Virus record (IMG/VR): IMGVR_UViG_3300017963_000192
Coordinates: 62,001 to 126,000 of that record
Direction: 5' to 3' (one strand)
DNA: 64,000 nt
Below are positions 19,801 through 63,448 of this stretch, one piece after another (the first letter of the stretch is position 1; each line of letters begins with the position of its first letter). A model generated the notes under the pieces. That model saw only the letters and a program-made list of their open reading frames with translations. It did not search any database and was not told where the DNA came from. Made by a program: the position numbers and the translations under genes.

Positions 19801-19809
19801 ATAAATCTC

Positions 19810-26070: not shown

Positions 26071-26076
26071 TCTCCT

Positions 26077-35424: not shown

Positions 35425-37988
35425 CAGTAAACTTCCCTAAATGATAATGATGCGTGCATCGTTGATGATGTTCCTAACGACTTTCCTACTAAAACCAGGA
35501 TATCTCTATCTCCAGAATAATTAGACACAAGTTTTAAAAGCATTTCTGGTACTTCGCTTGCTAACTGATTTCTATCAGCACCTTGACTAGATACAAACAT
35601 ATCTTCTATTTCTTCTCCACCGCTATACGCAGATGCTGTTATATCATATTCAGCAATTGAATTTGTACCAGCAGATACCCAGGATGCTCCAGTAAGTGTC
35701 GCTCCATGAATAAGTTTAACATGAACCAATGTATTTGATTCATTGTATGTTTTAAAGGTTAATGGTAATATTTGTGCTCGTTTATACGTTTCTTTCAATC
35801 GTAAAGCGATAATAGGTACATACGTTGCTCCAACAACACGGTCAGCGGCACCTGTCGTAACACTCCTTGTAACACCTTTGGGGTTATACCCTCCCTCACT
35901 CTCAATTTCAACACATACGTTATCCATATATGTATTACTTGCTGTAGAAGATGTATTTTCTATTTCATATCGTAGTGGTAGATTAGCTGTCTGCATATAA
36001 ACTTTATCTATAATATTAGCATGTAGAAATTGGTGGATATAGTAGAATTCTCCATCTATACTAAATCCCATACGAACACGTCCCATACCTAACCACTGAA
36101 TGTCCAATATAAATATTTGACCTTTAGATACATCTACTGTAATAGCACTTTTACCAGTACCATCTAAAGTATCTATATTCCAGTCATCTTGTTGTACTTT
36201 ATTTTCTACAACAGAGCCAGTAGTATAGCTCCTTTCTACTACATACAAACCGCCAGTAGATGTTTGTTCAAAAAATACACCATTATAATCATCAAAGTAT
36301 CCAATTCTTTTTACAACACCAGCTTTTTCAGACCCCATTATTCCTGTCATGGCAATTCTGAGAGAATTATGTTCATAAAATGATGTTAAATACGTATTAC
36401 CATCAGGTACACCTATAGCAACAGTCCATTGATATCCAATAATTTCTATAGACTCAACGATATCCCATCTTAAACTATCTTGTATATTTTTAAATAAATA
36501 TTTGAATTTAGTACTTTCTTTTCTATTTTTAATTTTATTATAGACTTTTTCTACATCTTCTTCTTTTCCGTAAATTCCAATCTCTTTATAGAATAATTCT
36601 ATATCTTTTTTTGAATGTAATGATAGTATATAAGCTCTGCTACATTCTTTACCATTACATTTAGGAATTTTTGAATGTATGTTTCCATGTATTCCAAACT
36701 TTAGTAAAAGTTCCTTTATATCTTTCACGAGTTGTTCTGAAATAGAACAATACCCAATCTCATCTTTAAACGCCCATCCATCAGTAGAATACAATCGAGA
36801 AAGAAACGTAGTTATAATTTCTTTTGGAGATTCAAATATATCATTTGGAATAAATTTATATGCGGAAGATTTCCCCAATAATTCAACTTTTCGTAAAAGT
36901 TTAGTAATTCCATTTTTTCCCTTTCTACTTCCATTTTTATAAACTACATGATAAGAATTACTATCGCCTTTCTTCTTTTTCAACACACAATCATATTGTC
37001 CTACTAAAGACTCAAATTCGTCTAATTGGCTTCCTTTGTTTTGACTAAATGTTACATGATGTGCAGATATTCCACCATCTCCTATAAGATAAGCTAAAAT
37101 TTTAGCATCTGATTCTGTTAAATTATTATTAGTTCCAAAAATTGGTAATGTATCAGCTATAGCAACAAAATCTCCTATTTTAATATTTTCAAGATTAGTC
37201 CATTCCTTAATATTGAAGTGTGGTTTATTTCCTTTTTTCCAAAAAGTTTTATAATATTTTTTTCCTACCCACAGTGGATGTTGAGCATTACCACATAATT
37301 CATTTCCAGATTTAGTTTTTATTTTATATATAGGTTCATAAGCATTCCATTCTGCTATAGCATCTACTTCTATTCTTTTTCCATCTCTAACAGTTAAAAG
37401 TTTAAACTCTGTATCAACTAAATCTTTAGCTTGTATTCTTCTACCATCAGCCAATGGTATATAATCAGAAGCTAATCTGCATTTACCTGGCTGATAATTA
37501 AAATACTCTTTAGTTTGTCGGATTACTTTATCACCATTTGCAGTTGTACATTCCAATCTTGTAGAAGCCTCGTTACTTCGATAAGTAGCTGTTCCTCCAC
37601 CAGTAAGTACGTTATTCCAAAATAATGGTTGGTCATTAAAAATTTGTGTTGAATCAAATAATGAATGAGGATTGCCAGTTCTTAATCGTGAGAAAGCATC
37701 AAGGTTAAAACTATCTGAAAACGTGGTTGTAACAGATATAGCACTATCCACACCCCTAGATGCTCCATCAGCATAATTATTTATATAGTCATCATAATCA
37801 GCAGTGCCATATTTTATTATTGTATAATAAGTAAATTCGTTAGATTGCCTTACACGAACAGTAAGATCGCTAACATCACTTTTAAGAGCGTGGTCGTATC
37901 CAAATTTAGGATTTGCATCTATTATAGCTTTTAAATCTAACCATTTTGGTATTTCTATCGATTGTACTATACTTCCTGACGCTGCCAT
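35424..37988 (-). CDS. Probable virion protein (lectin-like beta fold) interrupted by an intein (about 482 aa after splicing)
   Basis: Splicing gives FNYQPGK|SLRIAMTG; DAFSRLR, QWLGMGRVRMG, NLPLRYEI motifs seen in phage virion proteins. Confidence 0.65.
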   Translation of the reverse strand: MAASGSIVQSIEIPKWLDLKAIIDANPKFGYDHALKSDVSDLTVRVRQSNEFTYYTIIKYGTADYDDYINNYADGASRGVDSAISVTTTFSDSFNLDAFSRLRTGNPHSLFDSTQIFNDQPLFWNNVLTGGGTATYRSNEASTRLECTTANGDKVIRQTKEYFNYQPGKCRLASDYIPLADGRRIQAKDLVDTEFKLLTVRDGKRIEVDAIAEWNAYEPIYKIKTKSGNELCGNAQHPLWVGKKYYKTFWKKGNKPHFNIKEWTNLENIKIGDFVAIADTLPIFGTNNNLTESDAKILAYLIGDGGISAHHVTFSQNKGSQLDEFESLVGQYDCVLKKKKGDSNSYHVVYKNGSRKGKNGITKLLRKVELLGKSSAYKFIPNDIFESPKEIITTFLSRLYSTDGWAFKDEIGYCSISEQLVKDIKELLLKFGIHGNIHSKIPKCNGKECSRAYILSLHSKKDIELFYKEIGIYGKEEDVEKVYNKIKNRKESTKFKYLFKNIQDSLRWDIVESIEIIGYQWTVAIGVPDGNTYLTSFYEHNSLRIAMTGIMGSEKAGVVKRIGYFDDYNGVFFEQTSTGGLYVVERSYTTGSVVENKVQQDDWNIDTLDGTGKSAITVDVSKGQIFILDIQWLGMGRVRMGFSIDGEFYYIHQFLHANIIDKVYMQTANLPLRYEIENTSSTASNTYMDNVCVEIESEGGYNPKGVTRSVTTGAADRVVGATYVPIIALRLKETYKRAQILPLTFKTYNESNTLVHVKLIHGATLTGASWVSAGTNSIAEYDITASAYSGGEEIEDMFVSSQGADRNQLASEVPEMLLKLVSNYSGDRDILVLVGKSLGTSSTMHASLSFREVY
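36366..37481 (-). mobile_element. Intein (372 aa) with LAGLIDADG homing endonuclease
   Basis: Starts CRLASDYIPLADG, block B NAQHPL, ILAYLIGDGG and FLSRLYSTDG, ends YEHN with Ser at +1. Confidence 0.9.
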
Positions 37989-40171: not shown

Positions 40172-40723
40172 TTAAGTTCTAACCCATTCTATTGAAGAAG
40201 TTCTCCCACTTGTCCTTGTTATTGTACCAGTAAGAGTTTCTCCAATTATTACATTACCATCATCATCATATTGTTTATAAACTATTTGACTTATTCTTCC
40301 ACTTGTTCTAGTGTACTCAACACTTCTAATTTTAGTGCTTTTACCAGAATCGGTGTAATATATAACAGAAGAAATTCTTCCTCCAATCCTTTCTATTTCA
40401 CAGTAGCTGTCTTCTGCTATATTATGTACTAATTGGTCAAGTGACCTATGCTGACTGGCTGTTATACCACCAGTACTCGAATTAAAATTTATTGTTACTG
40501 CCCCAGTACCTTCTGTACCACCCGTCCATTCTATTGATATATCATCTCCAGCTATTATATTTGTAACTAATGCCTCTCCTGTAGAAGAAGTTATATTTAT
40601 ATCTGAACGACCTATTGTACCATCTTTTATATCTTCAGTTTCTAAAGAATCATCTTGGACTTGAGTACCAGTAACGGTCTCGTCCATAATTTGACGGTCT
40701 CCCCTGATTTTACTTCTAGACAA
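40172..40723 (-). CDS. Virion protein, N-terminus paralogous to 43191-45233 (start trimmed to TTG 40723)
   Basis: MSRSKIRGDRQIMD versus MASTKIRGNTQIMD; GGAG 9 nt upstream. Confidence 0.6.
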   Translation of the reverse strand: MSRSKIRGDRQIMDETVTGTQVQDDSLETEDIKDGTIGRSDINITSSTGEALVTNIIAGDDISIEWTGGTEGTGAVTINFNSSTGGITASQHRSLDQLVHNIAEDSYCEIERIGGRISSVIYYTDSGKSTKIRSVEYTRTSGRISQIVYKQYDDDGNVIIGETLTGTITRTSGRTSSIEWVRT

Positions 40724-41870
40724 TTCTTTTATCTCCCAAAAGAAATTCCATACATTCAAATATAGATTTTTCCTTATTAGTTAAATAATGTTTTTTTGTA
40801 ATTCTATATATCTTTACCCCTTGTAAGGAATCTTTTATTTCAACTTCTCTTATATAATCTTTAGTTTGTTGAGATTCTTTAATGTGATACTCTTCGTCAA
40901 ATTCAATTATTTTGTTAAGTTCTTCTACATAAAAGTCTAAATATCTAAATCCATGTTTACTATTAACAGGAACAATATATTCATTATTTTCTTCATTTAC
41001 TCCATTTGTTGAATAATAAACAGTATAATCATTTAAGTACTCTTCTAAACTATTAAAAAGTTCTTGTGATTCAATTGAAAATCTTGGTGCATAATGCATC
41101 CATTTACCATATTTCATTTTTGTAGTTTGTATTACTTTTCGCCTAATTTCTTTTGAAGACATTGGAGTGTCTCCACCATATCTTCTATTATTTGTAGCTT
41201 TAACTTTCTCTTTTATCTCTTCACATTTTAATGGGTTATCTACACCATAATTATTTATATAAGATTCTCTTTTCTTTAATTTTATATTTTCGTTTTGAGA
41301 TGGATTCTCCACTCCATATTTATCTATCATAGTTGTTTTTATTTTATCTTTAATTTCTTTTGATTGAAAGACATTAGTTACCCCGTATCTGTCTTTGCAA
41401 GTTTTAGCGTGTTTGTCTTTAATTACTTTCGATTGCATTGGGTGGGTAACGCCATAGTTTTTAATTAGTGATTTTCTTATAGTAGTTTTAACTTCTTCAG
41501 ATTGGAATACATTATCAACACCATATTTACTCTTAACACTATTTATAGCATTATCTGTAAAAAATCCAGTTGTAACACCATGATTCCTTAAACACGTCTC
41601 TCGTTTTTTATCTTTTATTTCCTCTAATTGAGATATATTTTCAACTCCATACTTTTCTAATGTTGTTCTCTTTCTCTTCTCCTTATTATTATAACTTAAA
41701 CTCCCATATTTTTCTATTTTAGACTTCCTTGCCTTTTCCTGTACTAATTTATTGTGCATTGGAAAACAAGAAACACAAATGGAATAAACTCTACCATTTT
41801 TGTCTTCCTTTAGATTATCTGAAGTATTACAATATTTACACTTTTTATTCATGTTACTAATATGACTCAT
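40716..41870 (-). CDS. Putative free-standing endonuclease with YGVxN repeats and a PD-(D/E)XK/Vsr-like C-terminus
   Basis: Many KYGVENxSQ-type repeats; RYLDFYVEELNKIIEFDEEYH. Confidence 0.7.
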   Translation of the reverse strand: MSHISNMNKKCKYCNTSDNLKEDKNGRVYSICVSCFPMHNKLVQEKARKSKIEKYGSLSYNNKEKRKRTTLEKYGVENISQLEEIKDKKRETCLRNHGVTTGFFTDNAINSVKSKYGVDNVFQSEEVKTTIRKSLIKNYGVTHPMQSKVIKDKHAKTCKDRYGVTNVFQSKEIKDKIKTTMIDKYGVENPSQNENIKLKKRESYINNYGVDNPLKCEEIKEKVKATNNRRYGGDTPMSSKEIRRKVIQTTKMKYGKWMHYAPRFSIESQELFNSLEEYLNDYTVYYSTNGVNEENNEYIVPVNSKHGFRYLDFYVEELNKIIEFDEEYHIKESQQTKDYIREVEIKDSLQGVKIYRITKKHYLTNKEKSIFECMEFLLGDKRIV

Positions 41871-42230
41871 TTATTCCTCTAACAACAAAAGTTTACCTTG
41901 TTGCGTTTTATTATTATCCTTAGTATCAACCTGTATGTGTAAAAACAAATCATGTACTTCTCTAAACTTCTCATCATACCAGACTACACGAAACACAGTA
42001 TTACTGTCAATACTCTGATAAACTCTTATTCTACCACTCAACTCAGCATCACGAATCATAATCATTAGGTTTGCCATTTGAAGTGTGTATACTAAATTTT
42101 TAAGTGGTAGGGTACGAACACATTTCTCCCCTCTGAATATTCGTATAGTCTCCGAGTCATACTTCTTTTTCTTAACAGACGAACAAGAGAGTATAAGAAT
42201 AGAAATTAAAAATGTTATAATCTTTTTCAT
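41871..42230 (-). CDS. Lipoprotein
   Basis: MKKIITFLISILILSC lipobox. Confidence 0.6.
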   Translation of the reverse strand: MKKIITFLISILILSCSSVKKKKYDSETIRIFRGEKCVRTLPLKNLVYTLQMANLMIMIRDAELSGRIRVYQSIDSNTVFRVVWYDEKFREVHDLFLHIQVDTKDNNKTQQGKLLLLEE

Positions 42231-42260
42231 CTAAAACCCTTTAAAAAAAGGGCTTGGCTT

Positions 42261-43064
42261 TTACAATATTTTCCAACCATTTGGAAATTCGCCCTTTTCT
42301 TCATATCTTCTAAATCTACCATATAAAGTAGCAGGCTTTATACCTATATCTATAGCTGCGTCTTTTATACAATCATATACAATATTATTAATCATAACTT
42401 TTTTTGCTGTAGGATTTTTACCGCCACAGAAATCTCTGTTTTCAAAATCACCCCTTCTCCATCTATTATACATATTATCAGAACTTTTTTTCAATCTATC
42501 TTCTGTCCAAGCTTCCTTACGTTTTTTGAGCATAGTATTTCTATAAGTTTTATTACTCCATATTCTTTTTTGAGCATTACTCATATTAAGTTTAGATTCT
42601 TTTGAAAATTTTCTATCTTTATTGGGTCCCTCATTACTAGTATAATAATTATATAATCCTAAACTTATTTTATTCCTTGTTTCTTTTGATGGAATTCTAC
42701 CTTTAGATTTTTTACCGCTTTTCTTTAACTTCTCTATAACCTCTTCAGATGGTTCTTGTAACCCTTCTCCACCTTTAGTAGAATTATATCCATATATTTT
42801 ATTATTACTATTATAAAATTTTATACCCTCTATCTCACATTTAATTAGTTCTTCTTTAGAGTAAGTATAACCTAGTATCTCCCATTTGAAATTTCTCCAC
42901 CCATACTTTCTAATAGCATTATAAAAATATGTGTTTCTTTTGGATTTAAGAGCATTTCTTTTATGTTTAGATTTTCGCTCATATAACTTTTGTCTAGTTT
43001 GACCTATATAAATTTTATTATTCAATAAATTAGTAGCCTTATATATTAAACCATAGATTTCCAT
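42261..43064 (-). CDS. GIY-YIG homing endonuclease with NUMOD3-like repeats
   Basis: GLIYKATNLLNNKIYIGQT, GYN, SKETRNKIS repeats, HTH-like tail. Confidence 0.9.
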   Translation of the reverse strand: MEIYGLIYKATNLLNNKIYIGQTRQKLYERKSKHKRNALKSKRNTYFYNAIRKYGWRNFKWEILGYTYSKEELIKCEIEGIKFYNSNNKIYGYNSTKGGEGLQEPSEEVIEKLKKSGKKSKGRIPSKETRNKISLGLYNYYTSNEGPNKDRKFSKESKLNMSNAQKRIWSNKTYRNTMLKKRKEAWTEDRLKKSSDNMYNRWRRGDFENRDFCGGKNPTAKKVMINNIVYDCIKDAAIDIGIKPATLYGRFRRYEEKGEFPNGWKIL

Positions 43065-46897: not shown

Positions 46898-48556
46898 CTA
46901 ATTAAAAGTAATACTAAAACTTGTTATTCTCTCACTTCCAGTAAATCCAACTCTAATGTATACTGTATCAGAACAGTTTACAATATTGTTTGTCCCAAAA
47001 GTGCAATCAATATACCCAGAACCAGATCCCACTCTACACCCACCAGAGACAGGGTTTCCGTTATTCCAATCACTTGCGTTATAATCATCTAAACAATCTA
47101 TCCAAACAGTTCCTCCACCGCTAGTTCCATCCCAAGCTTTTGCAAGTTTCATCTCAAGTGAGTTATAACTTCCAACTATATTTATTCTAAAATTAGCACT
47201 TGCTGTACCATCGTGTTCAAACTGTCTCCATAAGAATACTTCAGTATTCATATAAGAACCAGAGTAATCTGGTTGACTTGTTAGGTTTGGGGAATATATC
47301 GTAAAATCTGTAGTATTTCTCTCACATCCACCACATCTAAAAACGGCATCCATTATCCCCACATCAACAGTAGAATCCCAGGATTTCGCACCGCCCGAAT
47401 CAAAGTTTGCTGTAGAAGGACATCTCCAATCTTCATAATCAAATCTTTCTATTAATCTGGTACTAGAATTTGTTCTTGTATTTACAAGTATGTTTGCATT
47501 GCTAGATGGAACCCATGAACCATTTGTCCAATCTATAGGTCTTGCATTTATATTTGCAGTTGTTGTTACAGAACAAAAATTGGATGCATTAATAGCCCAA
47601 TTCGTCTTATTATAAGAATCGTTTGCATCATCATATGCATAAGTCCATCCAGTTAAATCCGAGCCAGATAAATCTAATGTTGGTAATCCATATTCACTAC
47701 CTTCAATATCTACTTGATTAAGAGGATATGTATGATAATTTAAATTATCAATATCAGTAATATCAACCGTAAATTGACTTCCAGTTGTATAATACTCAAC
47801 GCCAGACAAAAATCTTGTTACAACACTTCCAGCAGTTTCTACTATAGTAACACCGGACAATGTTGCAATAGTTGGATTAGGATCATAAAAAGTAGCTGTT
47901 TGTGTTTTGGTATAATCAATGTCATTATGATGAATCATTTCTACCGTAATTCTTCCACCACTTGATATTATTAAACTTATAGATATTGTTATAGTAACAA
48001 TACCTTTATACTTGATATAATCCGTATCCCAGGAAGTTACTTGTATTCTAATGTTATCTGAAGTATCATCATAATTTCCTGTTATTGCCGGAGTTGTTTT
48101 AGTAGCTACTTTTGTAATCTCATCAGCATCATAAACATTCACCTCTAAGGTGGAAGTTAAACTATCAAAAAGACATTGATTTGTTGTTGTATAACTCCAA
48201 GTCGTTGATTGCGTTGCAGGATGAAGTGTTCCAGCCACCCAATCTCCTTTACTAAAAGGAGTTCCTTCAGATGCTGGATTTGATATATACCTATTTGTAG
48301 TTGATATACTACCCACAGAGCAATTGTTATTACCATCACTTGTATTAAAATGAGAAACGAAGTCTACTTCTGGAGCAAATATTGTAACCTCATTAGGACC
48401 TGTTTTCATTGCATTATGACCTGTCCCAACAATGTTGACGGTTGTAATGCCCGTACCTATTACAACTCCTTCATCTTCAAAAGTAATACCTGTACTAGTA
48501 GGGGTTTGTTGTCCTCTTTTTCGTTCAAGAAGAATTTTAGGTTCTCTAAATCCCAT
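46898..48556 (-). CDS. Beta-rich virion / fibre-associated protein
   Basis: 552 aa, Thr/Ser/Gly/Asn-rich; EDEG..I...TTVNIVG motif. Confidence 0.55.
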   Translation of the reverse strand: MGFREPKILLERKRGQQTPTSTGITFEDEGVVIGTGITTVNIVGTGHNAMKTGPNEVTIFAPEVDFVSHFNTSDGNNNCSVGSISTTNRYISNPASEGTPFSKGDWVAGTLHPATQSTTWSYTTTNQCLFDSLTSTLEVNVYDADEITKVATKTTPAITGNYDDTSDNIRIQVTSWDTDYIKYKGIVTITISISLIISSGGRITVEMIHHNDIDYTKTQTATFYDPNPTIATLSGVTIVETAGSVVTRFLSGVEYYTTGSQFTVDITDIDNLNYHTYPLNQVDIEGSEYGLPTLDLSGSDLTGWTYAYDDANDSYNKTNWAINASNFCSVTTTANINARPIDWTNGSWVPSSNANILVNTRTNSSTRLIERFDYEDWRCPSTANFDSGGAKSWDSTVDVGIMDAVFRCGGCERNTTDFTIYSPNLTSQPDYSGSYMNTEVFLWRQFEHDGTASANFRINIVGSYNSLEMKLAKAWDGTSGGGTVWIDCLDDYNASDWNNGNPVSGGCRVGSGSGYIDCTFGTNNIVNCSDTVYIRVGFTGSERITSFSITFN

Positions 48557-48563
48557 TATTTTC

Positions 48564-48935
48564 CTATTTTGACATTAATGCTAATTCAACAATAGAGTCT
48601 TCAATAAAGTATATGCCAATCTGTCTAACCGAATCTTGAATATATAAAACATCTCCTGCTTTGAGGGTTTTAGCTCCATCTATAGAACTTGATAAATCCA
48701 TACCCTTTTTGTTAAATGCTATTCTTACTGAACCATCTCCAATATTATCAACTAATAAATACTCAAATGATTGTGTTATTGTAGTCTCAAAATAGGTGAG
48801 ACTACCATCCATAAAATCATATTCGTAAGAAGTTGCTGTAGTGCCACTTCTTACCAAGAATATTGTTTTCTGTACTTGATGTTCACTACTTGGAGAGGGT
48901 ATACCATCTCCTATGACTATCTTTTTTCTAGGCAT
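48564..48935 (-). CDS. Hypothetical virion protein
   Basis: 123-aa ORF heading the operon. Confidence 0.5.
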   Translation of the reverse strand: MPRKKIVIGDGIPSPSSEHQVQKTIFLVRSGTTATSYEYDFMDGSLTYFETTITQSFEYLLVDNIGDGSVRIAFNKKGMDLSSSIDGAKTLKAGDVLYIQDSVRQIGIYFIEDSIVELALMSK

Positions 48936-49864: not shown

Positions 49865-50221
49865 CTAGCACATGTTATTCCATCTTCTGACTGCATCAAT
49901 TTCTTCTTCTGTCTTTGGACCACTTGCCTTACAAGTTTCGCATTTAACTTGTTTATATTTAGTATCATGATATACATATATAAGAACATGTGTTGATTTA
50001 CAATATGGACAAGGTTTTAAATTCAAGTCTATATCCCAAAACATAATATCTTCAGTATAGGGGATAAAACAGGATGTACTACCATGTCTCCCTACATATC
50101 TGTATATCCATCCACTAGGAACTCTTATAAACGTTCCTTCATAATTATTCTTTTTTTGGATGTTTACTGACTCTCCAATTTTCATTTTAAATAATCTTTT
50201 TGCTAATTTATTTTCTTTCAT
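49865..50221 (-). CDS. Protein with a C-terminal Lar-like (restriction alleviation) Zn finger
   Basis: LKPCPYC...CETCKASGP...AVRRWN. Confidence 0.65.
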   Translation of the reverse strand: MKENKLAKRLFKMKIGESVNIQKKNNYEGTFIRVPSGWIYRYVGRHGSTSCFIPYTEDIMFWDIDLNLKPCPYCKSTHVLIYVYHDTKYKQVKCETCKASGPKTEEEIDAVRRWNNMC

Positions 50222-57548: not shown

Positions 57549-58037
57549 TTATTCTGGAATAGTTTCTTCAAATAAATCTTCTTCTCCTATTTCCTCAATA
57601 GGTCCTTCTGACATTAAGCTTTCTTCCGTTTCAGTCGTTTTTTCTGGCTTACTTTCCAATATTTCTTTTATCTTTTCGATGATTTTCATTTCAGCAGAAC
57701 CATCTTTTAAATAAAATTCAGATGCTCTTATAAAATCTTCAATAGACATCTTTCCTGCCCAAGCATCTAATGTTGGTTGTAACCAGTTTCTTAATTGTTT
57801 TTTATCTAAAGAATCAATATCTTCTAAATCTATTGATCTTAATATATTAAAACAAACTTCTGCACCACCAGTTGATTCAGCAATCACGAATCTTATTAAC
57901 CCTTCGTCTTTAGATAACTTAATATCAACACCCATTACATCTTTAATTTCATTTTCAGAAGCAATCTTTTTAATAATATTTTCAAGTTCTTTATAAGACT
58001 CTCCTTCCAAAGTAAAAGTATTACTATTAAGTTTCAT
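57549..58037 (-). CDS. Paralog 1 of a family with a shared N-terminal module
   Basis: MKLNSNTF...IIKKIASENEIKDVMGVDIKLS. Confidence 0.6.
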   Translation of the reverse strand: MKLNSNTFTLEGESYKELENIIKKIASENEIKDVMGVDIKLSKDEGLIRFVIAESTGGAEVCFNILRSIDLEDIDSLDKKQLRNWLQPTLDAWAGKMSIEDFIRASEFYLKDGSAEMKIIEKIKEILESKPEKTTETEESLMSEGPIEEIGEEDLFEETIPE

Positions 58038-58048
58038 TTTTTACTCCT

Positions 58049-58468
58049 TTATTTATATTTTAAACTTTCAACATATCTCATAATTTCTTCTTCCCTAAAA
58101 TAGTAATTATGATCTTCTACATATTCTAATAGAATTTTTGCTATATCTTCAGAAGACCACTTAATTATTGGTCCTCCTATATATCCCTTTTCTTCTAAAA
58201 AGCTCTCTACTTCCGAATCATGATTTAATTGAGTCTTAGAAAAATTAATTAATATATCTTTTAAATCATCAATTTCATAAACCCAACCTTCATCACTTTG
58301 CTGTGCCTTTTTTATAGAAAAGTTTATTGTTCCTTCTTTTTGAGAAAGTTTGATATTAACTCCAGAAACATTTTTAATTTCATTTTCAGAAGCAATCTTT
58401 TTAATAATATTTTCTAATTTTTTGTATTCTTCTTTTTCAAAAGAAAAAGTATTACTATTAATCTTCAT
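58049..58468 (-). CDS. Paralog 2 of a family with a shared N-terminal module
   Basis: MKINSNTF...IIKKIASENEIKNVSGVNIKLS. Confidence 0.6.
   Translation of the reverse strand: MKINSNTFSFEKEEYKKLENIIKKIASENEIKNVSGVNIKLSQKEGTINFSIKKAQQSDEGWVYEIDDLKDILINFSKTQLNHDSEVESFLEEKGYIGGPIIKWSSEDIAKILLEYVEDHNYYFREEEIMRYVESLKYK
58344..58396. repeat. 53-bp exact direct repeat, second copy at 59101-59153
   Basis: gaaagtttgatattaactccagaaacatttttaatttcattttcagaagcaat occurs at both positions. Confidence 0.85.
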
Positions 58469-58505
58469 TTTTTACTCCTTATTTTTATACTAAAAATATA
58501 TCACA

Positions 58506-59210
58506 TTAAAAAATTCTACTAATAAAGATATTAACATCAAATATCATAGAAAATTCTCCGTATTTTATATATCTTTCTCCTTCATTAGTAGGGTTTTCAA
58601 ACTCTAAATCTATAAAACTTGAATCTATTTCTTCAAAAGGATGTTTATTACCAGAGTACATAGCCTGAAATCCTTTTACAAATTCTGGTAATTTCATTTT
58701 AATAATTTCTTTTACAGCTTCATTAAATCCCTGTTCATCCATAGAAATATTATTTATTAAATAATTGTACATGTCTTCTTTAGCAAATTCAATTATTTTT
58801 CCTTCATTTACTATTGGCTCTCTATCTTCATTAAAAAATTCTTCCCTTTCCTCATAAGGTATTGGACTTACATCTATACTTATAGAAATTTTTCCTATTT
58901 CATATGGATCTGGGTTCATAGTACCTTCACTTGAATAATAATCAAAATATTCTTCAACTTCTTGTTCCCAATTTTTATCAAAATTAACATCAAAAATCTC
59001 TATGTATTCATCCAAAGATCTACTTCTACCAAATTTGTTATAAATTGGAAATCTTGTTTTATTTTTGTCTATTGCAAACTTAATAAGTCCTTTTTCTTTT
59101 GAAAGTTTGATATTAACTCCAGAAACATTTTTAATTTCATTTTCAGAAGCAATTTTCTTAACTACCTCTTCTATACTTTTGTAATCCTCAATTTTCAGAT
59201 CGAGTTTCAT
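58506..59210 (-). CDS. Paralog 3 of a family with a shared N-terminal module
   Basis: VVKKIASENEIKNVSGVNIKLS. Confidence 0.6.
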   Translation of the reverse strand: MKLDLKIEDYKSIEEVVKKIASENEIKNVSGVNIKLSKEKGLIKFAIDKNKTRFPIYNKFGRSRSLDEYIEIFDVNFDKNWEQEVEEYFDYYSSEGTMNPDPYEIGKISISIDVSPIPYEEREEFFNEDREPIVNEGKIIEFAKEDMYNYLINNISMDEQGFNEAVKEIIKMKLPEFVKGFQAMYSGNKHPFEEIDSSFIDLEFENPTNEGERYIKYGEFSMIFDVNIFISRIF

Positions 59211-59614: not shown

Positions 59615-60529
59615 CTACATTTTACTTCTTTTATCGTATAGTGCAGTCCTTATTTCACTATTTTGAACAACGTTAGGATGAGTTATAATAAAATCAAGTT
59701 CCTCAACATTCAAGTCTTCTGTTAAAGCCCATTGAGTAAACTCAATAGAGGTCATCCCAAGATGAGCACTTTCTGGAACACTTGAAAGTCTGAGCTTTTC
59801 CAATTTACTTAAAACAGTAGGTCTAATCCTTGGTGTTGTAGGCTGTAAAGGAGGAGGATTATGTGGAAGATTAACCTGTTGTTGGTTTTGGGCTTGCTGT
59901 GCTTGTTGCGATACTTGTGCTTGACTGATTTTCATTTGCTCAATTCTTCTCTTATTATCAAGCTCTATCTTTTTAGCTTCAAGATATTCTTCTGGAGTAA
60001 GTCTTTGCAACATTGATTTTCCTAAATCACCAGCCAACATGTTCCTTAAATCCCTAGACTTTTTAAGATCATCAAGAGTAGCATATCTTAATAAGTCCTC
60101 ACTCTTTCCCCTCAACACGTTCATGTCTAAATCAGATATTACAACGTGTCCGTTTGAATTGTTTTTAACATAAAATGTTTCGTTACCGTACTCATCCATA
60201 AAAACTTTGGCTTTAGCTGTTACTTCAGTAACACTTTTAGAGGATTCTCCGAGTTCTCTCTCTATCTCCTCTATTTTAGACTTGGTATCACTTTGAGAAG
60301 TATCTACAGCAACTGGTTGTTGTGGAACTTCTCCGCTAACATTCCCCTGAACTTGTTGTGTTGTTTGAAATTCAGGAGTAATTGTTTGACTTGTTTGAGT
60401 CGCTTGTAGATTTTGGGCATCAGTTGGAACAACGTAACCGTTAACTCCATCTTGAGTGATGTCCCTACCAACTAACTCACTTTGTTTTTGAGCCTTTCTC
60501 ATTAGCTCTTCTTGTAAATTTGGATTCAT
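59615..60529 (-). CDS. Gln-rich hypothetical protein
   Basis: 304-aa ORF with an AAGGAG RBS downstream of a candidate late promoter. Confidence 0.55.
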   Translation of the reverse strand: MNPNLQEELMRKAQKQSELVGRDITQDGVNGYVVPTDAQNLQATQTSQTITPEFQTTQQVQGNVSGEVPQQPVAVDTSQSDTKSKIEEIERELGESSKSVTEVTAKAKVFMDEYGNETFYVKNNSNGHVVISDLDMNVLRGKSEDLLRYATLDDLKKSRDLRNMLAGDLGKSMLQRLTPEEYLEAKKIELDNKRRIEQMKISQAQVSQQAQQAQNQQQVNLPHNPPPLQPTTPRIRPTVLSKLEKLRLSSVPESAHLGMTSIEFTQWALTEDLNVEELDFIITHPNVVQNSEIRTALYDKRSKM

Positions 60530-60558
60530 TTCATATCTCCTTAATATTATATTAATAC

Positions 60559-60592
60559 ATTAAAATATAACTATAATCAGTAAAATTTTAAG
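60559..60592 (-). promoter_or_regulatory. Candidate late promoter CTTAAAAT-N14-TTATATTTTAAT (perfect copy)
   Basis: Upstream of 60529. Confidence 0.6.
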
Positions 60593-61304
60593 TATTCTTT
60601 GACTTATTTATTTCTAATAAATCAGGATTGCTTTCAAGAAAATGTACAACTTCTTCTATAGAAAAAGGCTTTTTTTTATACAATTCACCATATATCATTT
60701 TAGCAAGTACATAATCCTCCTCATAATCAACTGTCAATCGAGGATATCCTAAAGGGCTTTGTAATCCAGCATTATAAAATTCAACATTGAATTTATCTCT
60801 ATTATTTTTAATGTAAGTTGTTACATGTTCTCTATCAGATTTTTTCGTTACTTCATTGTATGTTCTTTGAATGGCTTCACTTTTGAATATTTCTATGCCT
60901 GTTCCTATAGGAAGTCCAACCATAGCAAGTAAATCAAATTTTTTTTCAATTTCTCTTTTAATGGCAAAAGAACCGTAATTAACGTCAATAAAAGGGTTAT
61001 CCCCCGTTATTCTTGCTATGTATTTACTAGGATATTCCTCTGAAATTATGTAAAATCTCTCTAAAACATCCTCTATAGCACCTACAAAAACATTACATCT
61101 CATTTCAAATGCTAAATCTATTATAGGTTTATTAGAACCACAGTAACTTGTAGCTACAAACACCTCATCTACGTTCTCAAAAGCTTGAACTCTTTCAATT
61201 ACGTGTGCTAACAAAGGTTTTCCAGCCAAATCAAGCATAGCTTTATCTGGTAGCCTATTAGATTTCATTCTTGCCTGTATAACAGCTATTACGTTTTTTC
61301 TCAT
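60588..61304 (-). CDS. SpsF-like acylneuraminate/sugar cytidylyltransferase
   Basis: IQARMKSNRLPDKAM, RITGDNP, DREHVT, RLTVDYEED. Confidence 0.88.
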   Translation of the reverse strand: MRKNVIAVIQARMKSNRLPDKAMLDLAGKPLLAHVIERVQAFENVDEVFVATSYCGSNKPIIDLAFEMRCNVFVGAIEDVLERFYIISEEYPSKYIARITGDNPFIDVNYGSFAIKREIEKKFDLLAMVGLPIGTGIEIFKSEAIQRTYNEVTKKSDREHVTTYIKNNRDKFNVEFYNAGLQSPLGYPRLTVDYEEDYVLAKMIYGELYKKKPFSIEEVVHFLESNPDLLEINKSKNT

Positions 61305-61339
61305 ACGGTAGGAATATTCTTCATCTCATTTTTAATATT

Positions 61340-61373
61340 ATAAAATGATAATGAATTTAGCAAAAATTTTAAG
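61340..61373 (-). promoter_or_regulatory. Candidate late promoter CTTAAAAT-N14-TTATCATTTTAT
   Basis: Upstream of 61304. Confidence 0.5.
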
Positions 61374-61400
61374 GATATTTTTTTATTGGTTTATAAAATT

Positions 61401-61472
61401 CGTCCCTGACAGGAATCGAACCTGCTATACATAGTTTTAGAGACTATTGCCTAGCCATTTGGCTTCAGGGAC
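61401..61472 (-). tRNA. tRNA with anticodon CUA (amber suppressor-type), no encoded CCA
   Basis: GTCCCTG AA GCC AAATGGCTA GGC A ATAGT CTCTAAA ACTAT GTATA GCAGG TTCGATT CCTGT CAGGGAC G: full cloverleaf. Confidence 0.92.
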
Positions 61473-61480
61473 GAGTAACT

Positions 61481-61915
61481 TTACGCTACTTTTTCTTCAA
61501 TCCAATGTCTTTTAACACTAACAATTGTCATATTATCAACTTCAAACTCCAATTCGTACTTTTCACAGAGTTTTATGACTCTTGCATTGACCATATATAC
61601 TGTTGAGGTATCATTTACTCTGTTAGGTTCGATTTGGTCAAGGGTTTTCCCCCTACACATACTTAAAAATATGTGATTTGACCGAAATTCAAGGTAAGGG
61701 TAGTCCAAATTGCCTTTTTCACGTTCAATTTGCATCTCTTTTTGGATTTCTTGATAAGAAGAGTCTTTATCTTTCATAAATTCGGGCAAATTGCTCTTAT
61801 TTAGACATTTTGCAAGCCTACTTTCAAATTTTCGGCTTAAATGTTTCGAAATTCTTAATTTTTTTGCTAAATTCTTGTTATGTTCTCGTAATTCGATGTA
61901 TTCTTCTCTAATCAT
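61481..61915 (-). CDS. Hypothetical protein
   Basis: AAGGAG RBS; ends 8 nt before the tRNA. Confidence 0.6.
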   Translation of the reverse strand: MIREEYIELREHNKNLAKKLRISKHLSRKFESRLAKCLNKSNLPEFMKDKDSSYQEIQKEMQIEREKGNLDYPYLEFRSNHIFLSMCRGKTLDQIEPNRVNDTSTVYMVNARVIKLCEKYELEFEVDNMTIVSVKRHWIEEKVA

Positions 61916-61937
61916 TGTAAATCTCCTTATAATTAAT

Positions 61938-62033
61938 TTATAAATTGTGGTTGGTAGGTAAATTAATCATAGGAGGTGAGCGAGAACCTCTATTGGCGGG
62001 AAATTTTCTTAATATTTTGATAATCTAGGTCAT
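61938..62033 (-). other. Leader mini-ORF with an amber stop at codon 3 (MT*IIKILRK...; 31 codons if read through)
   Basis: AAGGAGG-CAAAAA-ATG ACC TAG ATT ATC ... TTA TAA. Confidence 0.4.
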
Positions 62034-62060
62034 TTTTTGCCTCCTTAACTTATAAGGTTC

Positions 62061-62089
62061 AATTTATTATAAAAGTTACAGTTTGTCAA
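62061..62089 (-). promoter_or_regulatory. Sigma70-type promoter TTGACA-N17-TAAATT
   Basis: Perfect -35 box; precedes the leader ORF, the 61481-61915 gene and the tRNA. Confidence 0.5.
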
Positions 62090-62129
62090 TAAAAAAACCC
62101 TTCTAAAAATAAGGAGGGTTTTTTTATTG
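62087..62129. terminator. Intrinsic terminator closing the pentamer array
   Basis: 15-bp inverted repeat CAATAAAAAAACCCT / AGGGTTTTTTTATTG. Confidence 0.8.
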
Positions 62130-62130
62130 G

Positions 62131-62686
62131 TTTTCTGTTCAATTCTGCTCAATTCTTATCTCTTCTGTTCAGTTCTCGTCATATCTTTTCAGCTCTTGCC
62201 ACCTCACTTCTTTTAACTAATTTGACCAGCTAAGTAATGAACTTAGAAAACTTCTTTAAAAGTTCTGGTCTTTTCTACTCTTAACTTCTCAGATCTAAAC
62301 TATTCAAATCTCGTCTACTCTTAACTTGCCTGATCTAGTCTGTTCCTATCTTATAACTAATTTGGGCAGTTAGGTAACGAACCTAATTAATTTCTTTAAA
62401 AATTCTGCCCTCCTCTGTTCTGGACAATTCTTTTCTTTCCTATTCTTTACTCATCAAAACTATCCTACTCTACTCATGTCTGCTCTTTTCTTCTCTCCTC
62501 TTTCCATTTAACTAATTAGGGCAGCCAAGTAATGAACTTGAACAATTCCTTTAAGAATTCTGCCCTCTTTGCTATTCTTGTCTTCTCAGATCTAAACTAT
62601 TCAATTCTCGTCTATTCTTAACTTGCCTGATCTAACCTGATCTTATCTTATAACTAATTTGGGCAGTGGAGGATTAGAACCTCCAC
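62131..62686 (-). ncRNA. Putative guide-RNA array: 4 phased pentamer tracts (15, 19, 16, 16 units of consensus AGA-NN) separated by structured 57-nt repeats
   Basis: Repeats at 62214-62270, 62354-62410, 62509-62565 and a half repeat at 62651-62686; all 66 pentamers have an invariant G. Confidence 0.85.
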
Positions 62687-62704
62687 TAACAAACCAAAGT
62701 TATA

Positions 62705-63448
62705 TTAACCAACCTTTGCCCAATTCTTATCTTTGATAACTGGATTAAATGGTTCAATGGTGTCTGATGCAACAATGCCTTTAATTGAATATGTTCCATA
62801 TGTTCCAGAATTTTCCGGTCTCCAGGCACCGTATCCAGATAATGCTCCAGCTTTTACTATTATCTCAGTCATTTGTTCTGGACTAATAACGTTTTCATCA
62901 AAAGCAACTCTTAAATTTAAAGTCCAATCAGAAAACATTGCTCTGTAAAAAGGCACCAAACTCCCTTTCTTACCACCGAGATTTCCAAGTTCAATGCTTT
63001 TATCGTACTTTTTATATTTAATTGGAATTAAACCTCTCCTTGCTGTAGGAACTACAAAAATAGCCGCCTCTAATGCTTTTTTCATTTTTCTTCCTAGGAG
63101 ATTTTGACCAACATTTACAAACGATTTTTTAAATCCTATTGCAGGTACTCCTACTAAACCTTTTTTTTCATCGAGCCAATGAGCCTTTCCTTTACATTCC
63201 TCATCAGGGTCAACTGCTTTGGTTCTTTTAAGGATTTTATTTTTTTCTTTTTCAAAATCTTCTCTTCGCTCTTTTAAAAGATTTTTTGATTTTGCGTTTT
63301 GAAGAAGCTCTGTTTGCCCTTCAATAACAAACTCAATCCACGAAATAAATCGAGATGGCTCTATAATATTTAGATTATCTTTTACAGAGCCTCCCTTTTT
63401 TTCTGCTTTTTTGCCTAATTCTTGTACACTATCCTTTTTCTTTGGCAT
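62705..63448 (-). CDS. RAMP/Cas7-like RRM-fold protein, candidate effector of the pentamer array
   Basis: FVIEGQTELL first strand, VGVPAIGFKKSF (like the RAMP IPgssiKG motif), YRAMFSDWTL, Gly-rich C-terminal loop AGALSGYGAWRPENSGTYGTY. Confidence 0.7.
   Translation of the reverse strand: MPKKKDSVQELGKKAEKKGGSVKDNLNIIEPSRFISWIEFVIEGQTELLQNAKSKNLLKERREDFEKEKNKILKRTKAVDPDEECKGKAHWLDEKKGLVGVPAIGFKKSFVNVGQNLLGRKMKKALEAAIFVVPTARRGLIPIKYKKYDKSIELGNLGGKKGSLVPFYRAMFSDWTLNLRVAFDENVISPEQMTEIIVKAGALSGYGAWRPENSGTYGTYSIKGIVASDTIEPFNPVIKDKNWAKVG

What the first reader, a model, noticed from the sequence alone, without database searches (positions are those of the whole stretch)
61401..61472. Amber-reading tRNA(CUA) in a genome that still uses TAG as a stop
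Seen: a complete cloverleaf with anticodon loop CU-CUA-AA. The D arm (GCC..GGC with A13:A22) and G73 resemble tRNA-Gln, while the loop is one base from tRNA-Trp (CU-CCA-AA). Position 8 is A rather than the usual U. I counted 19 genes ending in TAG, and ORFs up to 1420 aa contain no internal TAG, so the code is not reassigned. Established: suppressor tRNAs occur in large phages, including relatives of TAG-recoded lineages, and Trp-derived amber suppressors can be charged with Gln. Inference: regulated read-through, or an intermediate stage towards recoding.
Basis: partly seen in the sequence, partly recalled or inferred. Interest (0 to 1): 0.7.

Follow-up and report, generated by a model that had tools for sequence, protein, structure and literature searches.

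The report
Amber suppressor tRNA in standard-code phage
A large phage from marine sediment carries an intact tRNA gene that should read the UAG stop codon, but the phage still ends about one gene in five with UAG and shows no sign of a changed genetic code, so this is one more case of a known and still unexplained phage accessory gene.

Summary
Window 61401-61472 (- strand) encodes a complete cloverleaf tRNA with anticodon CUA (Rfam 57.7 bits; ARAGORN). Three independent assemblies reproduce it base for base.

The window belongs to a 217.7 kb jumbo myovirus from a sediment/seawater metagenome. The phage uses the standard code:
- TAG ends 55 of 287 called genes (19 of 80 in the window).
- Reading TAG as sense adds no more coding density than reading TGA as sense.
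- No homologue alignment runs through a TAG.
- The record holds no RF1/RF2, no class Ib, Ic or IIb aminoacyl-tRNA synthetase and no PylS.

The tRNA is specific to this lineage. It sits with an orphan 144-aa ORF in a 741-bp module bounded by a 15-nt direct repeat found nowhere else in the genome. That module lies in a variable spacer downstream of the major capsid gene. Relatives, including two complete genomes, have no tRNA there, and the five whose full records were searched have no CUA tRNA at all.

TAG usage, backup stops and stop changes between orthologues do not differ from the suppressor-less relative. This does not support regulated read-through or a step toward recoding.

Similar CUA tRNAs occur in at least 119 IMG/VR contigs and in cultured phage GAP32. 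The two nearest that were tested genome-wide are also standard code. The inserted amino acid is unresolved.

The parts
61401..61472 (-). tRNA gene with anticodon CUA (amber-suppressor type). G1-C72, A8, A13:A22, U33, A37, 5-nt variable loop, T-loop UUCGAUU, discriminator G73. No encoded CCA.
   Evidence: ARAGORN; Rfam RF00005 57.7 bits; MFE cloverleaf, z = -3.96; identical in independent assemblies
61481..61915 (-). Orphan 144-aa ORF that ends 8 nt before the tRNA 5' end. Probably co-transcribed with it. Function unknown.
   Evidence: ORF list. Only self-hits among 5.8 billion proteins. No Pfam or PHROG family. No informative Atlas neighbour.
61378..61392 (.). Proximal copy of the 15-nt direct repeat TTTTTTTATTGGTTT, 9 nt beyond the tRNA 3' end.
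   Evidence: the repeat finder D3. With one mismatch or fewer, the 15-mer occurs only at these two places in the 217.7 kb genome.
62119..62133 (.). Distal copy of the same 15-nt direct repeat; it overlaps one arm of the hairpin. The two copies bound a 741-bp module (hairpin, promoter-like site, ORF144, tRNA).
62087..62129 (.). Strong 18-bp hairpin followed by a T-run on both strands (bidirectional terminator-like). It separates the upstream 247-aa gene and repeat region from the ORF144-tRNA unit.
   Evidence: the repeat finder I2; terminator scan
62061..62089 (-). Sigma-70-like promoter match (TTGACA, 17 nt, TAAATT), 146 nt upstream of the ORF144 start. A weak hint only: the number of sites in the region is not above shuffles.
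61353..61376 (.). One arm of a 24-nt inverted repeat, 88% complementary. The other arm is at 61851-61874, inside the 5' part of ORF144. The two arms bracket the tRNA and most of ORF144. Meaning unknown.
   Evidence: the repeat finder I1
60588..61304 (-). Cytidylyltransferase-family gene (238 aa) immediately downstream of the tRNA. It lies in the same variable spacer and is absent from relative G002.
   Evidence: Pfam PF02348, 101.5 bits. No G002 hit. No IMG/VR relative.
59615..60529 (-). Conserved 304-aa head-module gene marking the lower edge of the variable spacer. The upper edge is the major capsid gene just beyond the window end (genome 126278-127444).
   Evidence: Synteny in 7 relatives, with the capsid-to-304-aa spacer ranging from 0.5 to 4.2 kb

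Best explanation
This is a genuine, structurally intact tRNA gene with anticodon CUA. It is carried as a lineage-specific accessory module in a jumbo myovirus that uses the standard code.

Shown:
- The tRNA is real and reproducible.
- The genome and its clade use TAG as a normal, frequent stop.
- The tRNA sits with an orphan ORF in a 741-bp unit bounded by a unique 15-nt direct repeat.
- That unit lies in a hypervariable spacer of the head-gene operon, where no relative has a tRNA.
- The genome bears no footprint of suppression.

Inferred:
- The module was acquired recently by recombination.
- If transcribed, the tRNA would be processed and given its CCA end by host enzymes, because no CCA is encoded and no phage CCA-adding enzyme was found.
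- A host synthetase that reads U35 would charge it. Gln or Lys are the most likely residues, by analogy with E. coli amber suppressors. The U31-A39 pair and G73 lean toward Gln where a GlnRS exists.
- It would compete with RF1 to give low-level, untargeted UAG read-through of host genes and of the 55 TAG-ending phage genes. Their in-frame extensions to the next stop have a median of 8 codons.

Its benefit, if any, is accessory: buffering of nonsense mutations, or perturbation of host or competitor translation. It is not a code change.
For: - tRNA identity. Same sequence in other assemblies.
- Standard code: stops TAA 186, TAG 55, TGA 46. ORF coverage 0.786 under code 11, 0.818 with TAG as sense, 0.814 with TGA as sense.
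- TAG stops often overlap the next gene's Shine-Dalgarno site, as in TAGGAG.
- Of the 16 TAG-ending genes whose G002 alignment reaches the C-terminus, only one has an HSP that passes the TAG, and that extension contains further stops.
- No code-change genes: RF-1 and PCRF domains, tRNA-synt_1c, 1b and 2, and PylS are all absent. The 16 kb beyond the record's ends in longer assemblies has none either, and no tRNA.
- Lineage specificity: 19 loci from relatives found by the capsid gene have no tRNA in the syntenic spacer. G002 (252.9 kb, complete), G007 (236 kb, complete) and G006 (161 kb) have no CUA tRNA. The JGI metagenome scan returned only the source contig.
- Module boundaries.
- No footprint of suppression.
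- Known kind: at least 119 IMG/VR contigs carry CUA tRNAs with the same loop and T-loop. The nearest two, in 96-100% complete genomes G011 and G012, are standard code. Cultured Cronobacter phage GAP32 has an annotated Sup-tRNA with the same loop. Sinorhizobium jumbo phage AP-J-162 has a CUA tRNA (PMC11242549).
- Charging: LysRS/GlnRS see-saw at the 31-39 pair (PMC1483225).
Against: - Nothing here shows expression, processing, charging or suppression. No RNA run could be listed.
- A8, A13:A22 and a non-consensus D loop might impair folding or recognition, although A8 is common among phage CUA tRNAs.
- With a single lineage there is no test of purifying selection on the tRNA.
- An active suppressor in a genome with 19% TAG stops and no adaptation is somewhat surprising. 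This may mean the tRNA is weak, very recent, or inactive.
- The host is unknown, so the presence of RF1 and GlnRS is assumed.
- The isotype classifier points to an Arg-like body (p = 0.42) rather than Gln or Lys. ArgRS normally needs C35, which is U here (my own knowledge).
Confidence: 0.55

Rival explanations
1. Neutral or decaying passenger. The tRNA gene arrived with a mobile module but is not expressed, not charged, or too poor a substrate to suppress. This would explain why the genome shows no adaptation.
For: No footprint of suppression in TAG share, backup stops, +4 context or orthologue stops. Unusual A8 and A13:A22. Present in one lineage only. The neighbouring ORF is an orphan.
Against: All stems are fully paired and the conserved tertiary positions (G18G19, U33, A37, T-loop) are intact. 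Its CM score of 57.7 bits lies inside the 30-68 bit range of the phage's other tRNAs. A8 is enriched among phage CUA tRNAs, which argues that it is tolerated.
Confidence: 0.2
2. First step toward TAG recoding. The suppressor was acquired before any TAG depletion, and in-frame TAGs will accumulate later.
For: Low GC (31%) and a phage-borne suppressor are two ingredients of the published route to recoding (bioRxiv 10.1101/2021.08.26.457843). The tRNA sits in the late head operon.
Against: That model expects depletion of the stop codon first. Here TAG is 19% of stops, above TGA, and equal to relatives. There are no in-frame TAGs. There is no RF2 or synthetase. No recoded or CUA-bearing member of the clade was found.
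Confidence: 0.08
3. Programmed read-through. The suppressor exists to make C-terminally extended or fused isoforms of particular phage proteins, for example the 141-aa ORF (window 19810-20235) read into the 815-aa tail-module ORF (17353-19800), or 299 aa read into 352 aa (26976 to 25012).
For: Nine TAG-ending genes are followed in frame, with no other stop, by the next gene. Five of these are in the window and two are in the tail module.
Against: The rate equals that after TAA (21% against 18%). Every downstream ORF has its own start codon and most have a Shine-Dalgarno site, often overlapping the TAG. The three in-frame pairs for which both partners have G002 homologues are in different frames there. 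No Pfam or PHROG profile spans a junction.
Confidence: 0.06
4. Host- or competitor-directed tool. Amber read-through is meant to damage or reprogramme host proteins, defence systems or co-infecting phages that end critical genes in TAG, rather than to act on the phage's own genes.
For: Proposed in the literature for suppressor tRNAs of standard-code phages (PMC8386662). A possible host-type promoter of its own lies upstream. The phage's head genes around the tRNA (genome 120-160 kb) almost all end in TAA: 38 TAA, 4 TGA, 2 TAG.
Against: No host is known and no target is identified. Amber suppressor strains of E. coli are viable (my own knowledge), so global suppression is a weak weapon. The phage's own tail genes end in TAG at the normal rate.
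Confidence: 0.1
5. It is a pyrrolysine tRNA, as ARAGORN labels it.
For: CUA anticodon; ARAGORN label 'tRNA-Pyl'. Pyl-using bacteria and archaea live in marine sediment (my own knowledge).
Against: ARAGORN gives that label to any CUA anticodon. This tRNA has canonical G18G19, T-loop UUCGAUU, a 5-nt variable loop and two bases between the acceptor and D stems. tRNA-Pyl lacks these features (my own knowledge). No PylS was found in the record.
Confidence: 0.01

Closest known systems
Suppressor tRNA(CUA) genes of TAG-recoded (code 15) gut phages: crAss-like, Lak, and the Garnet, Amethyst and other 'gemstone' clades (bioRxiv 10.1101/2021.08.26.457843; PMC9523058)
   Same: Phage-encoded tRNA with a CUA anticodon in a low-GC, large genome, placed near late structural genes. 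No phage synthetase in most cases, so host charging is assumed.
   Different: Those genomes have in-frame TAG in structural and lysis genes, a gain in coding density under code 15, rare TAG stops, and sometimes RF2. None of this is seen here. The source here is a sediment/seawater metagenome, not gut.
Sup-tRNA of the cultured jumbo myovirus Cronobacter phage vB_CsaM_GAP32 (JN882285.1, 293273-293347), and the CUA tRNA of Sinorhizobium jumbo phage AP-J-162 (PMC11242549)
   Same: CUA-anticodon tRNA in a jumbo phage. GAP32's tRNA has the same loop CUCUAAA, a near-identical T arm and a similar acceptor stem. Function unknown in each.
   Different: The GAP32 tRNA lies next to another tRNA, has U8 and A73, and matches only 83% over 42 nt. 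Ours stands alone, 100 kb from the phage's tRNA array. That GAP32 and AP-J-162 use the standard code is my own knowledge, not tested here.
Uncultured IMG/VR phage CUA tRNAs (for example in L096, L146, L121, L093; genomes G011 and G012)
   Same: Shared A8-A9, loop CUCUAAA, variable loop G-N-ATA and T arm GCAGGTTCGATTCCTGTC. G011 and G012 are standard code over the whole genome.
   Different: Their acceptor stems start GCG, mostly have A73 and encode CCA. They lie inside arrays of about 30 tRNAs. TAG ends only 6.5-8% of their genes, against 19% here.
E. coli amber suppressors supE (tRNA-Gln CUA) and Su7 (tRNA-Trp CUA charged with Gln); laboratory T4 psu amber suppressors (my own knowledge; McClain 1970 is cited in PMC8386662)
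   Same: A single-anticodon route to UAG reading. G73, U35, A37 and G10 are GlnRS determinants that are present here.
   Different: Those arise by point mutation of a resident sense tRNA. Here no sense-anticodon orthologue exists in any relative or collection searched. U1-A72, G2-C71, G3-C70 and U38 of tRNA-Gln are absent.

Membership tests
Canonical elongator tRNA (Rfam RF00005) | Covariance-model score above the gathering threshold, with a full-length cloverleaf | tested here: met
   57.7 bits against 29, model positions 1-71 of 71
Canonical elongator tRNA (Rfam RF00005) | Conserved tertiary positions: U8, A14, G18G19, U33, purine 37, T-loop TPsiC-R-A | tested here: inconclusive
   All are present except U8, which is A, and the D loop is non-consensus. 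A8 occurs in 8% of other phage tRNAs and 22% of phage CUA tRNAs.
Amber suppressor tRNA | Anticodon CUA in a 7-nt loop with U33 | tested here: met
   Loop C-U-CUA-A-A
Amber suppressor tRNA | Is expressed, aminoacylated and inserts a residue at UAG | not testable with these tools
   No RNA run was listed. No reporter or mass-spectrometry data.
Stop-codon-recoded (code 15) phage | In-frame TAG inside conserved genes; coding density gain when TAG is read as sense | tested here: not met
   The gain with TAG as sense (+0.03) equals the TGA control (+0.03). No valid homologue alignment runs through a TAG.
Stop-codon-recoded (code 15) phage | TAG rare or absent as a terminator | tested here: not met
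   55 of 287 genes end in TAG
Stop-codon-recoded (code 15) phage | Code-change accessories (RF2, a matching synthetase) | tested here: not met
   PF00472, PF03462, PF00749, PF00579 and PF00152 are absent. None in the flanks taken from longer assemblies. The record is 88% complete.
tRNA-Pyl | Compact D loop without G18G19, 3-nt variable loop, 6-bp anticodon stem, non-canonical T-loop, with PylS present | tested here: not met
   G18G19 and T-loop UUCGAUU are present and the variable loop is 5 nt. TIGR02367 (PylS) is absent.
tRNA-Gln-derived suppressor (supE-like) | U1-A72, G2-C71, G3-C70, G10, U35, A37, U38, G73 (E. coli GlnRS identity set; my own knowledge) | tested here: inconclusive
   G10, U35, A37 and G73 are present. 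1-72 is G-C, 2-71 is U-A, 3-70 is C-G and position 38 is A. The classifier does not place Gln in its top eight, but its Gln recall is only 0.36.
tRNA-Trp-derived suppressor (Su7-like) | Trp-type body with G73 and loop CU-CNA-AA | tested here: inconclusive
   The nearest GenBank phage matches over the anticodon and T arms are tRNA-Trp(CCA) of OlisA3 and ChrisDB and a Trp-like pseudo-tRNA of Mater, at 78-85% over 37-50 nt. The whole-body classifier does not favour Trp.
tRNA-Arg-type body (as reported for the phiKp24 Sup-TTA tRNA, PMC8386662) | Overall similarity to tRNA-Arg, with A20 and C35 needed for ArgRS (my own knowledge) | tested here: inconclusive
   Logistic model: Arg p = 0.42, class precision 0.57. 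The acceptor stem and G73 are identical to tRNA-Arg(CCU) of L088 and L119. Position 35 is U and position 20 is not A.

The most novel reading that the evidence does not exclude
The 741-bp unit (orphan ORF144 plus tRNA-CUA, bounded by a unique 15-nt direct repeat) is a mobile 'suppressor cassette' caught immediately after it landed in a TAG-rich, standard-code phage. If so, suppressor acquisition can precede TAG depletion. This reverses the published depletion-first route to phage recoding. ORF144 could then be a new factor that helps the tRNA work, or helps the cassette move.
Probability: 0.1. Interest if true: 0.65.

Novelty: new member of a known kind. Interest (0 to 1): 0.35.

Why it matters
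Why phages that keep the standard code carry suppressor tRNAs is an open question. This case is unusually clean.
- The genome is nearly complete.
- Complete sister genomes lack the tRNA.
- TAG is an abundant stop, so 55 phage genes would be affected.
- The insertion is precisely delimited.

The case shows that a suppressor can sit in a genome without any detectable adaptation. That constrains models in which acquiring a suppressor follows stop-codon depletion or quickly drives recoding. It also offers a compact module (ORF144 plus tRNA) that can be tested directly in a reporter assay. Beyond that, it adds one more example to a class already documented in both cultured and uncultured phages.

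Tried and rejected
- **TAG recoding of the whole genome or parts of it.** Rejected.
- **An apparent run of six in-frame TAGs after the 1005-aa gene (genome 199771-200016).** It is the antisense strand of a lytic-transglycosylase gene.
- **First read-through test with all six frames.** It was flawed, because off-frame and antisense translations of homologous DNA also align. I replaced it with a test anchored on called genes.
- **Pfam and PHROG profiles spanning TAG junctions.** None found.
- **Relatives through the cytidylyltransferase next to the tRNA.** None in IMG/VR.
- **Ancestry through the D arm.**
  - The IMG/VR D-arm pattern hit tRNA-Lys, Glu and Cys genes of viral contigs.
  - The GTDB D-arm pattern hit one tRNA-Lys(UUU) on a phage-like contig binned as a Bacteroidota MAG.
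  - The D arm is therefore not diagnostic.
- **JGI metagenome scan with the anticodon arm left free.** It returned only the source contig.
- **Isotype by nearest neighbour (leave-one-out accuracy 64%) and by logistic regression (cross-validated 71%).** Weakly Arg-like and not decisive.
- **ORF144 function.** No homologues, no families and no structural neighbours.
- **Expression.** No RNA run was listed.
- **Two look-ups of terminal genes.** They failed because my start codons differed from the recorded gene calls. They were repeated successfully with other genes.
- **Local TAG recoding around 59 other IMG/VR CUA tRNAs.** Mostly absent, but loci of 6-15 kb cannot exclude recoding elsewhere in those genomes. 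Only G011 and G012 were checked over the whole genome.
- **Phage CCA-adding enzyme.** Absent.
Full report
**1. The observation**

ARAGORN reports a single tRNA in the window, at 61400-61473 on the minus strand, with anticodon cta. Rfam's tRNA model matches 61401-61472 (-) over its full length at 57.7 bits, E 7.8e-10, against a gathering score of 29.

The aligned structure has these features:
- a 7-bp acceptor stem, GUCCCUG pairing with CAGGGAC;
- A8 and A9;
- a D arm GCCA / AAUGGCU / AGGC, with A13 opposite A22 and G18G19 present;
- a 5-bp anticodon stem;
- the loop C-U-C-U-A-A-A;
- a 5-nt variable loop;
- T arm GCAGG / UUCGAUU / CCUGU;
- discriminator G.

No CCA is encoded. ARAGORN draws an eighth acceptor pair because the base before G1 is C and can pair with G73. 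I treat that as an alternative drawing, not a finding. The minimum-energy fold is a four-arm cloverleaf at -26.2 kcal/mol, z = -3.96.

**2. Is the anticodon an artefact?**

Logan contigs of two public runs cover 60400-62400 in one piece with zero differences, at about 13x word depth. An ENA MEGAHIT contig from another sample accession is identical over the tRNA and its flanks.

The phage has been assembled from at least two JGI metagenomes, two ENA analyses and one SRA run. Contigs hide rare variants, so read-level polymorphism remains untested.

**3. What the genome is**

The window is bases 62001-126000 of a 217,703-bp IMG/VR virus record, estimated 88% complete, with GC of 31%. The source is a sediment/seawater metagenome.

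It is a myovirus. It has a tail sheath (window 21744-23105) and a baseplate wedge (6952-8412), plus homing endonucleases and inteins.

It carries 14 tRNAs. Thirteen form an array at 17.8-24.3 kb. The CUA tRNA stands alone at 123.4 kb, about 100 kb away.

**4. The genetic code**

A simple greedy gene call gives 287 genes covering 93.6% of the genome. Their stops are TAA 186, TAG 55 and TGA 46.

Coverage by open frames of at least 150 codons is 0.786 under code 11, 0.818 with TAG read through, and 0.814 with TGA read through. TAG therefore gives no specific gain, in any 10-kb bin.

TAG stops are frequently part of the next gene's Shine-Dalgarno site (TAGGAG, TAGAGGA), which is ordinary translational coupling.

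A suspicious open stretch containing six TAGs after the 1005-aa gene turned out to be the antisense strand of a lytic-transglycosylase gene.

**5. Is there programmed read-through?**

- After a TAG stop, the next gene lies in the same frame with no intervening stop in 9 of 43 cases. After TAA the figure is 28 of 152. There is no enrichment.
- All nine downstream ORFs have their own start codons, and most have a ribosome-binding site just upstream.
- For the three of these nine pairs in which both genes have homologues in the relative G002, the two genes are in different frames there.
- Among the 16 TAG-ending genes whose G002 alignment reaches the C-terminus, only one HSP continues past the TAG. 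That continuation contains further stops in the query.
- No Pfam or PHROG profile bridges a junction.
- In-frame extensions to the next stop have a median of 8 codons after TAG and 7 after TAA.

**6. Code-change accessories**

The record has no match to the RF-1 or PCRF domains, to class Ic (Gln/Glu), class Ib (Trp/Tyr) or class IIb (Lys/Asp/Asn) synthetase cores, to PylS, or to the CCA-adding enzyme family. All positive controls gave matches.

Longer assemblies of the same phage extend about 6 kb and 10 kb beyond the two ends of the record. One is 234,748 bp. Those flanks hold a Mu-like transposase with an IstB-like ATPase, methyltransferases and COOH-NH2 ligases. They contain no release factor, synthetase or tRNA.

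**7. Relatives**

The tail sheath and the major capsid protein (genome 126278-127444) recover a clade of uncultured phages at 61-86% protein identity. The clade includes two complete genomes with terminal repeats, G002 (252,876 bp) and G007 (236,368 bp), and a 161-kb fragment, G006.

Their tRNAs were listed by Rfam and typed with ARAGORN:

| Record | tRNAs found | CUA tRNA |
|---|---|---|
| G002 | 28 | none |
| G007 | 4 | none |
| G006 | 19 | none |

All the relatives examined use the standard code. TAG ends 23% of called genes in the complete relative G002; the shorter relative loci have too few genes to estimate a share.

The head module is collinear in seven relatives. It runs from a 294-aa gene through 593-, 168-, 677- and 232-aa genes to the capsid gene. 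A variable spacer of 0.5 to 4.2 kb follows, and then conserved 304-aa and 309-aa genes.

In this phage the spacer is 3.75 kb. It holds two genes whose G002 homologues lie elsewhere in that genome, a 570-nt ORF-free repeat region, a strong hairpin, ORF144, the tRNA and a cytidylyltransferase gene. None of the 19 loci from relatives has a tRNA in the spacer.

**8. The module**

The 15-mer TTTTTTTATTGGTTT occurs at 61378-61392, 9 nt past the tRNA 3' end, and at 62119-62133, inside one arm of the hairpin. With up to one mismatch allowed, it occurs nowhere else in the 217.7 kb genome.

The 741 bp from one copy to the next contain the rest of the hairpin, a TTGACA-17-TAAATT promoter-like site, ORF144 and the tRNA. 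A 24-nt inverted repeat, 88% complementary, pairs the sequence just after the tRNA with codons 14-21 of ORF144.

ORF144 has no homologue among 5.8 billion proteins other than itself. It matches no family and has no useful Atlas neighbour.

I infer, but have not shown, that the unit was inserted by recombination at the repeat.

**9. Footprint of suppression**

If the suppressor had been active for long, TAG stops should be fewer, better backed up, or placed in less leaky contexts than in the suppressor-less sister genome. They are not.

| Measure | This phage (G000) | Relative G002 | Test |
|---|---|---|---|
| Genes ending in TAG | 55 of 287 | 93 of 411 | Fisher p = 0.30 |
| Median codons from TAG to the next TAA/TGA | 11 | 13 | Mann-Whitney p = 0.75 |

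Among 54 orthologue pairs with aligned C-termini, 7 have TAG only in this phage and 7 have TAG only in G002. The base after TAG is a purine in 42 of 55 cases. In E. coli that is the context more prone to suppression (my own knowledge).

The head-gene region at genome 120-160 kb is poor in TAG (2 of 44 genes) but equally poor in TGA (4 of 44). This matches the general TAA preference of highly expressed genes.

**10. How common is this elsewhere?**

The fetched loci yielded 88 distinct CUA tRNAs.

The nearest to ours are in L096, L146, L121 and L093. They share A8-A9, the variable loop and the T arm. They have different acceptor stems, mostly A73, and an encoded CCA.

Around 59 of these tRNAs the local coding-density gain from reading TAG was generally no larger than that from reading TGA.

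Two nearly complete genomes carrying the closest tRNAs were tested end to end:

| Genome | Size | TAG-specific density gain | Genes ending in TAG |
|---|---|---|---|
| G011 | 166.5 kb | none | 21 of 270 |
| G012 | 205.6 kb | none | 20 of 310 |

In GenBank phages the best matches over the anticodon and T arms are the annotated Sup-tRNA of Cronobacter phage GAP32 and phage tRNA-Trp(CCA) genes.

The literature also records:
- a CUA tRNA in Sinorhizobium jumbo phage AP-J-162 (PMC11242549);
- a UUA suppressor with an Arg-type body in Klebsiella phage phiKp24 (PMC8386662);
- suppressor acquisition by standard-code relatives of recoded gut phages (bioRxiv 10.1101/2021.08.26.457843).

The kind of feature is therefore known. 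Its function in standard-code phages is not.

**11. Which amino acid?**

This remains unresolved.

- *Body similarity.* The 'Gln-like' D arm also occurs in a tRNA-Lys(UUU) of a tRNA array on a contig binned as a Bacteroidota MAG. The acceptor stem plus G73 is identical to tRNA-Arg(CCU) of L088 and L119. A logistic classifier trained on 330 labelled phage tRNAs with the anticodon masked reached 71% cross-validated accuracy. It gives Arg 0.42 and Cys 0.14, with Gln and Trp outside the top eight, but its recall for Gln and Trp is poor.
- *Identity elements (my own knowledge).* ArgRS needs C35, which is U here. GlnRS and LysRS both read U35, and most engineered E. coli amber suppressors end up carrying Gln or Lys. 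G73, G10 and A37 favour GlnRS.
- *The 31-39 pair.* U31-A39 moderately lowers lysine acceptance and raises glutamine acceptance in E. coli (PMC1483225).

My estimate is Gln about 0.35, Lys about 0.3, and the rest divided among Arg, Trp and others. It depends on a host that is not known.

**12. Verdict**

Nothing points to regulated read-through or to a path toward recoding.

The best reading is a recently acquired accessory module whose tRNA, if active, causes untargeted, low-level UAG read-through. A neutral passenger is the main rival.

It is a new member of a known kind. Its interest is moderate because the case is cleanly delimited and directly testable.

Noticed in passing
window 62129-62667: Three copies of a repeat of about 102 nt (61-90% identical; spacing 140 and 297 nt) lie in a 570-nt stretch with no ORF of 40 aa or more. 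The stretch is purine-rich on the minus strand, and each copy follows a GGGCAG...CTGCCC hairpin. A weak tRNA-like T-arm match sits at 62660-62714 (-) (RF00005, 19.4 bits). This could be a non-coding RNA or a regulatory array.
   Followed up: partly
window 1626-3707 and 35424-37988: Inteins with LAGLIDADG domains interrupt a radical-SAM / anaerobic-RNR-like gene and a virion structural protein (phrog_1645).
   Followed up: no
window 57549-59210: Three tandem paralogous genes (162, 139 and 234 aa) share a near-identical N-terminal segment of about 35 residues. They lie inside the head module.
   Followed up: no
window 31440-32279: A 279-aa protein with a clear PAS domain (PF13426, 66.5 bits) is encoded among the tail-module genes of a phage.
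   Followed up: no
window 40716-43064 and 49865-50221: Two homing-endonuclease genes and a Lar-like restriction-alleviation gene.
   Followed up: no
L048:1501-1573 (-) (relative G002, 173028-173100): The sister phage has an isolated tRNA with the unusual anticodon AUU (loop CU-AUU-AA). It lies next to what looks like an intron-split tRNA and a cold-shock protein gene.
   Followed up: partly
L077 (JANPHP010000516.1, binned as a Bacteroidota MAG): This 13.7-kb contig carries an array of 11 tRNAs, including a UCA (opal-suppressor-type) tRNA and a tRNA with anticodon AUA. It looks like a phage fragment binned into a bacterial MAG.
   Followed up: no
genome-wide; for example window 19800-19812, 26070-26080, 48556-48566: TAG stop codons frequently double as the first bases of the next gene's Shine-Dalgarno site (TAGGAG, TAGAGGA). 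This may help explain why TAG is as common as 19-23% of stops in this clade.
   Followed up: partly
L248:10749-13044 (beyond the left end of the IMG/VR record, in the 234,748-bp ENA contig): A Mu-like transposase (rve / Mu-transpos_C_2) and an IstB-like ATPase follow a cluster of DNA methylases, a HindVP-type restriction enzyme and a Vsr nuclease. IMG/VR labels a near-identical 111-kb fragment (G001) a provirus.
   Followed up: no
genome 120001-160000 (window 58001 onward): The head-gene region has only 2 TAG and 4 TGA stops among 44 genes; the rest are TAA. This fits the TAA preference of highly expressed genes rather than avoidance of TAG specifically.
   Followed up: partly
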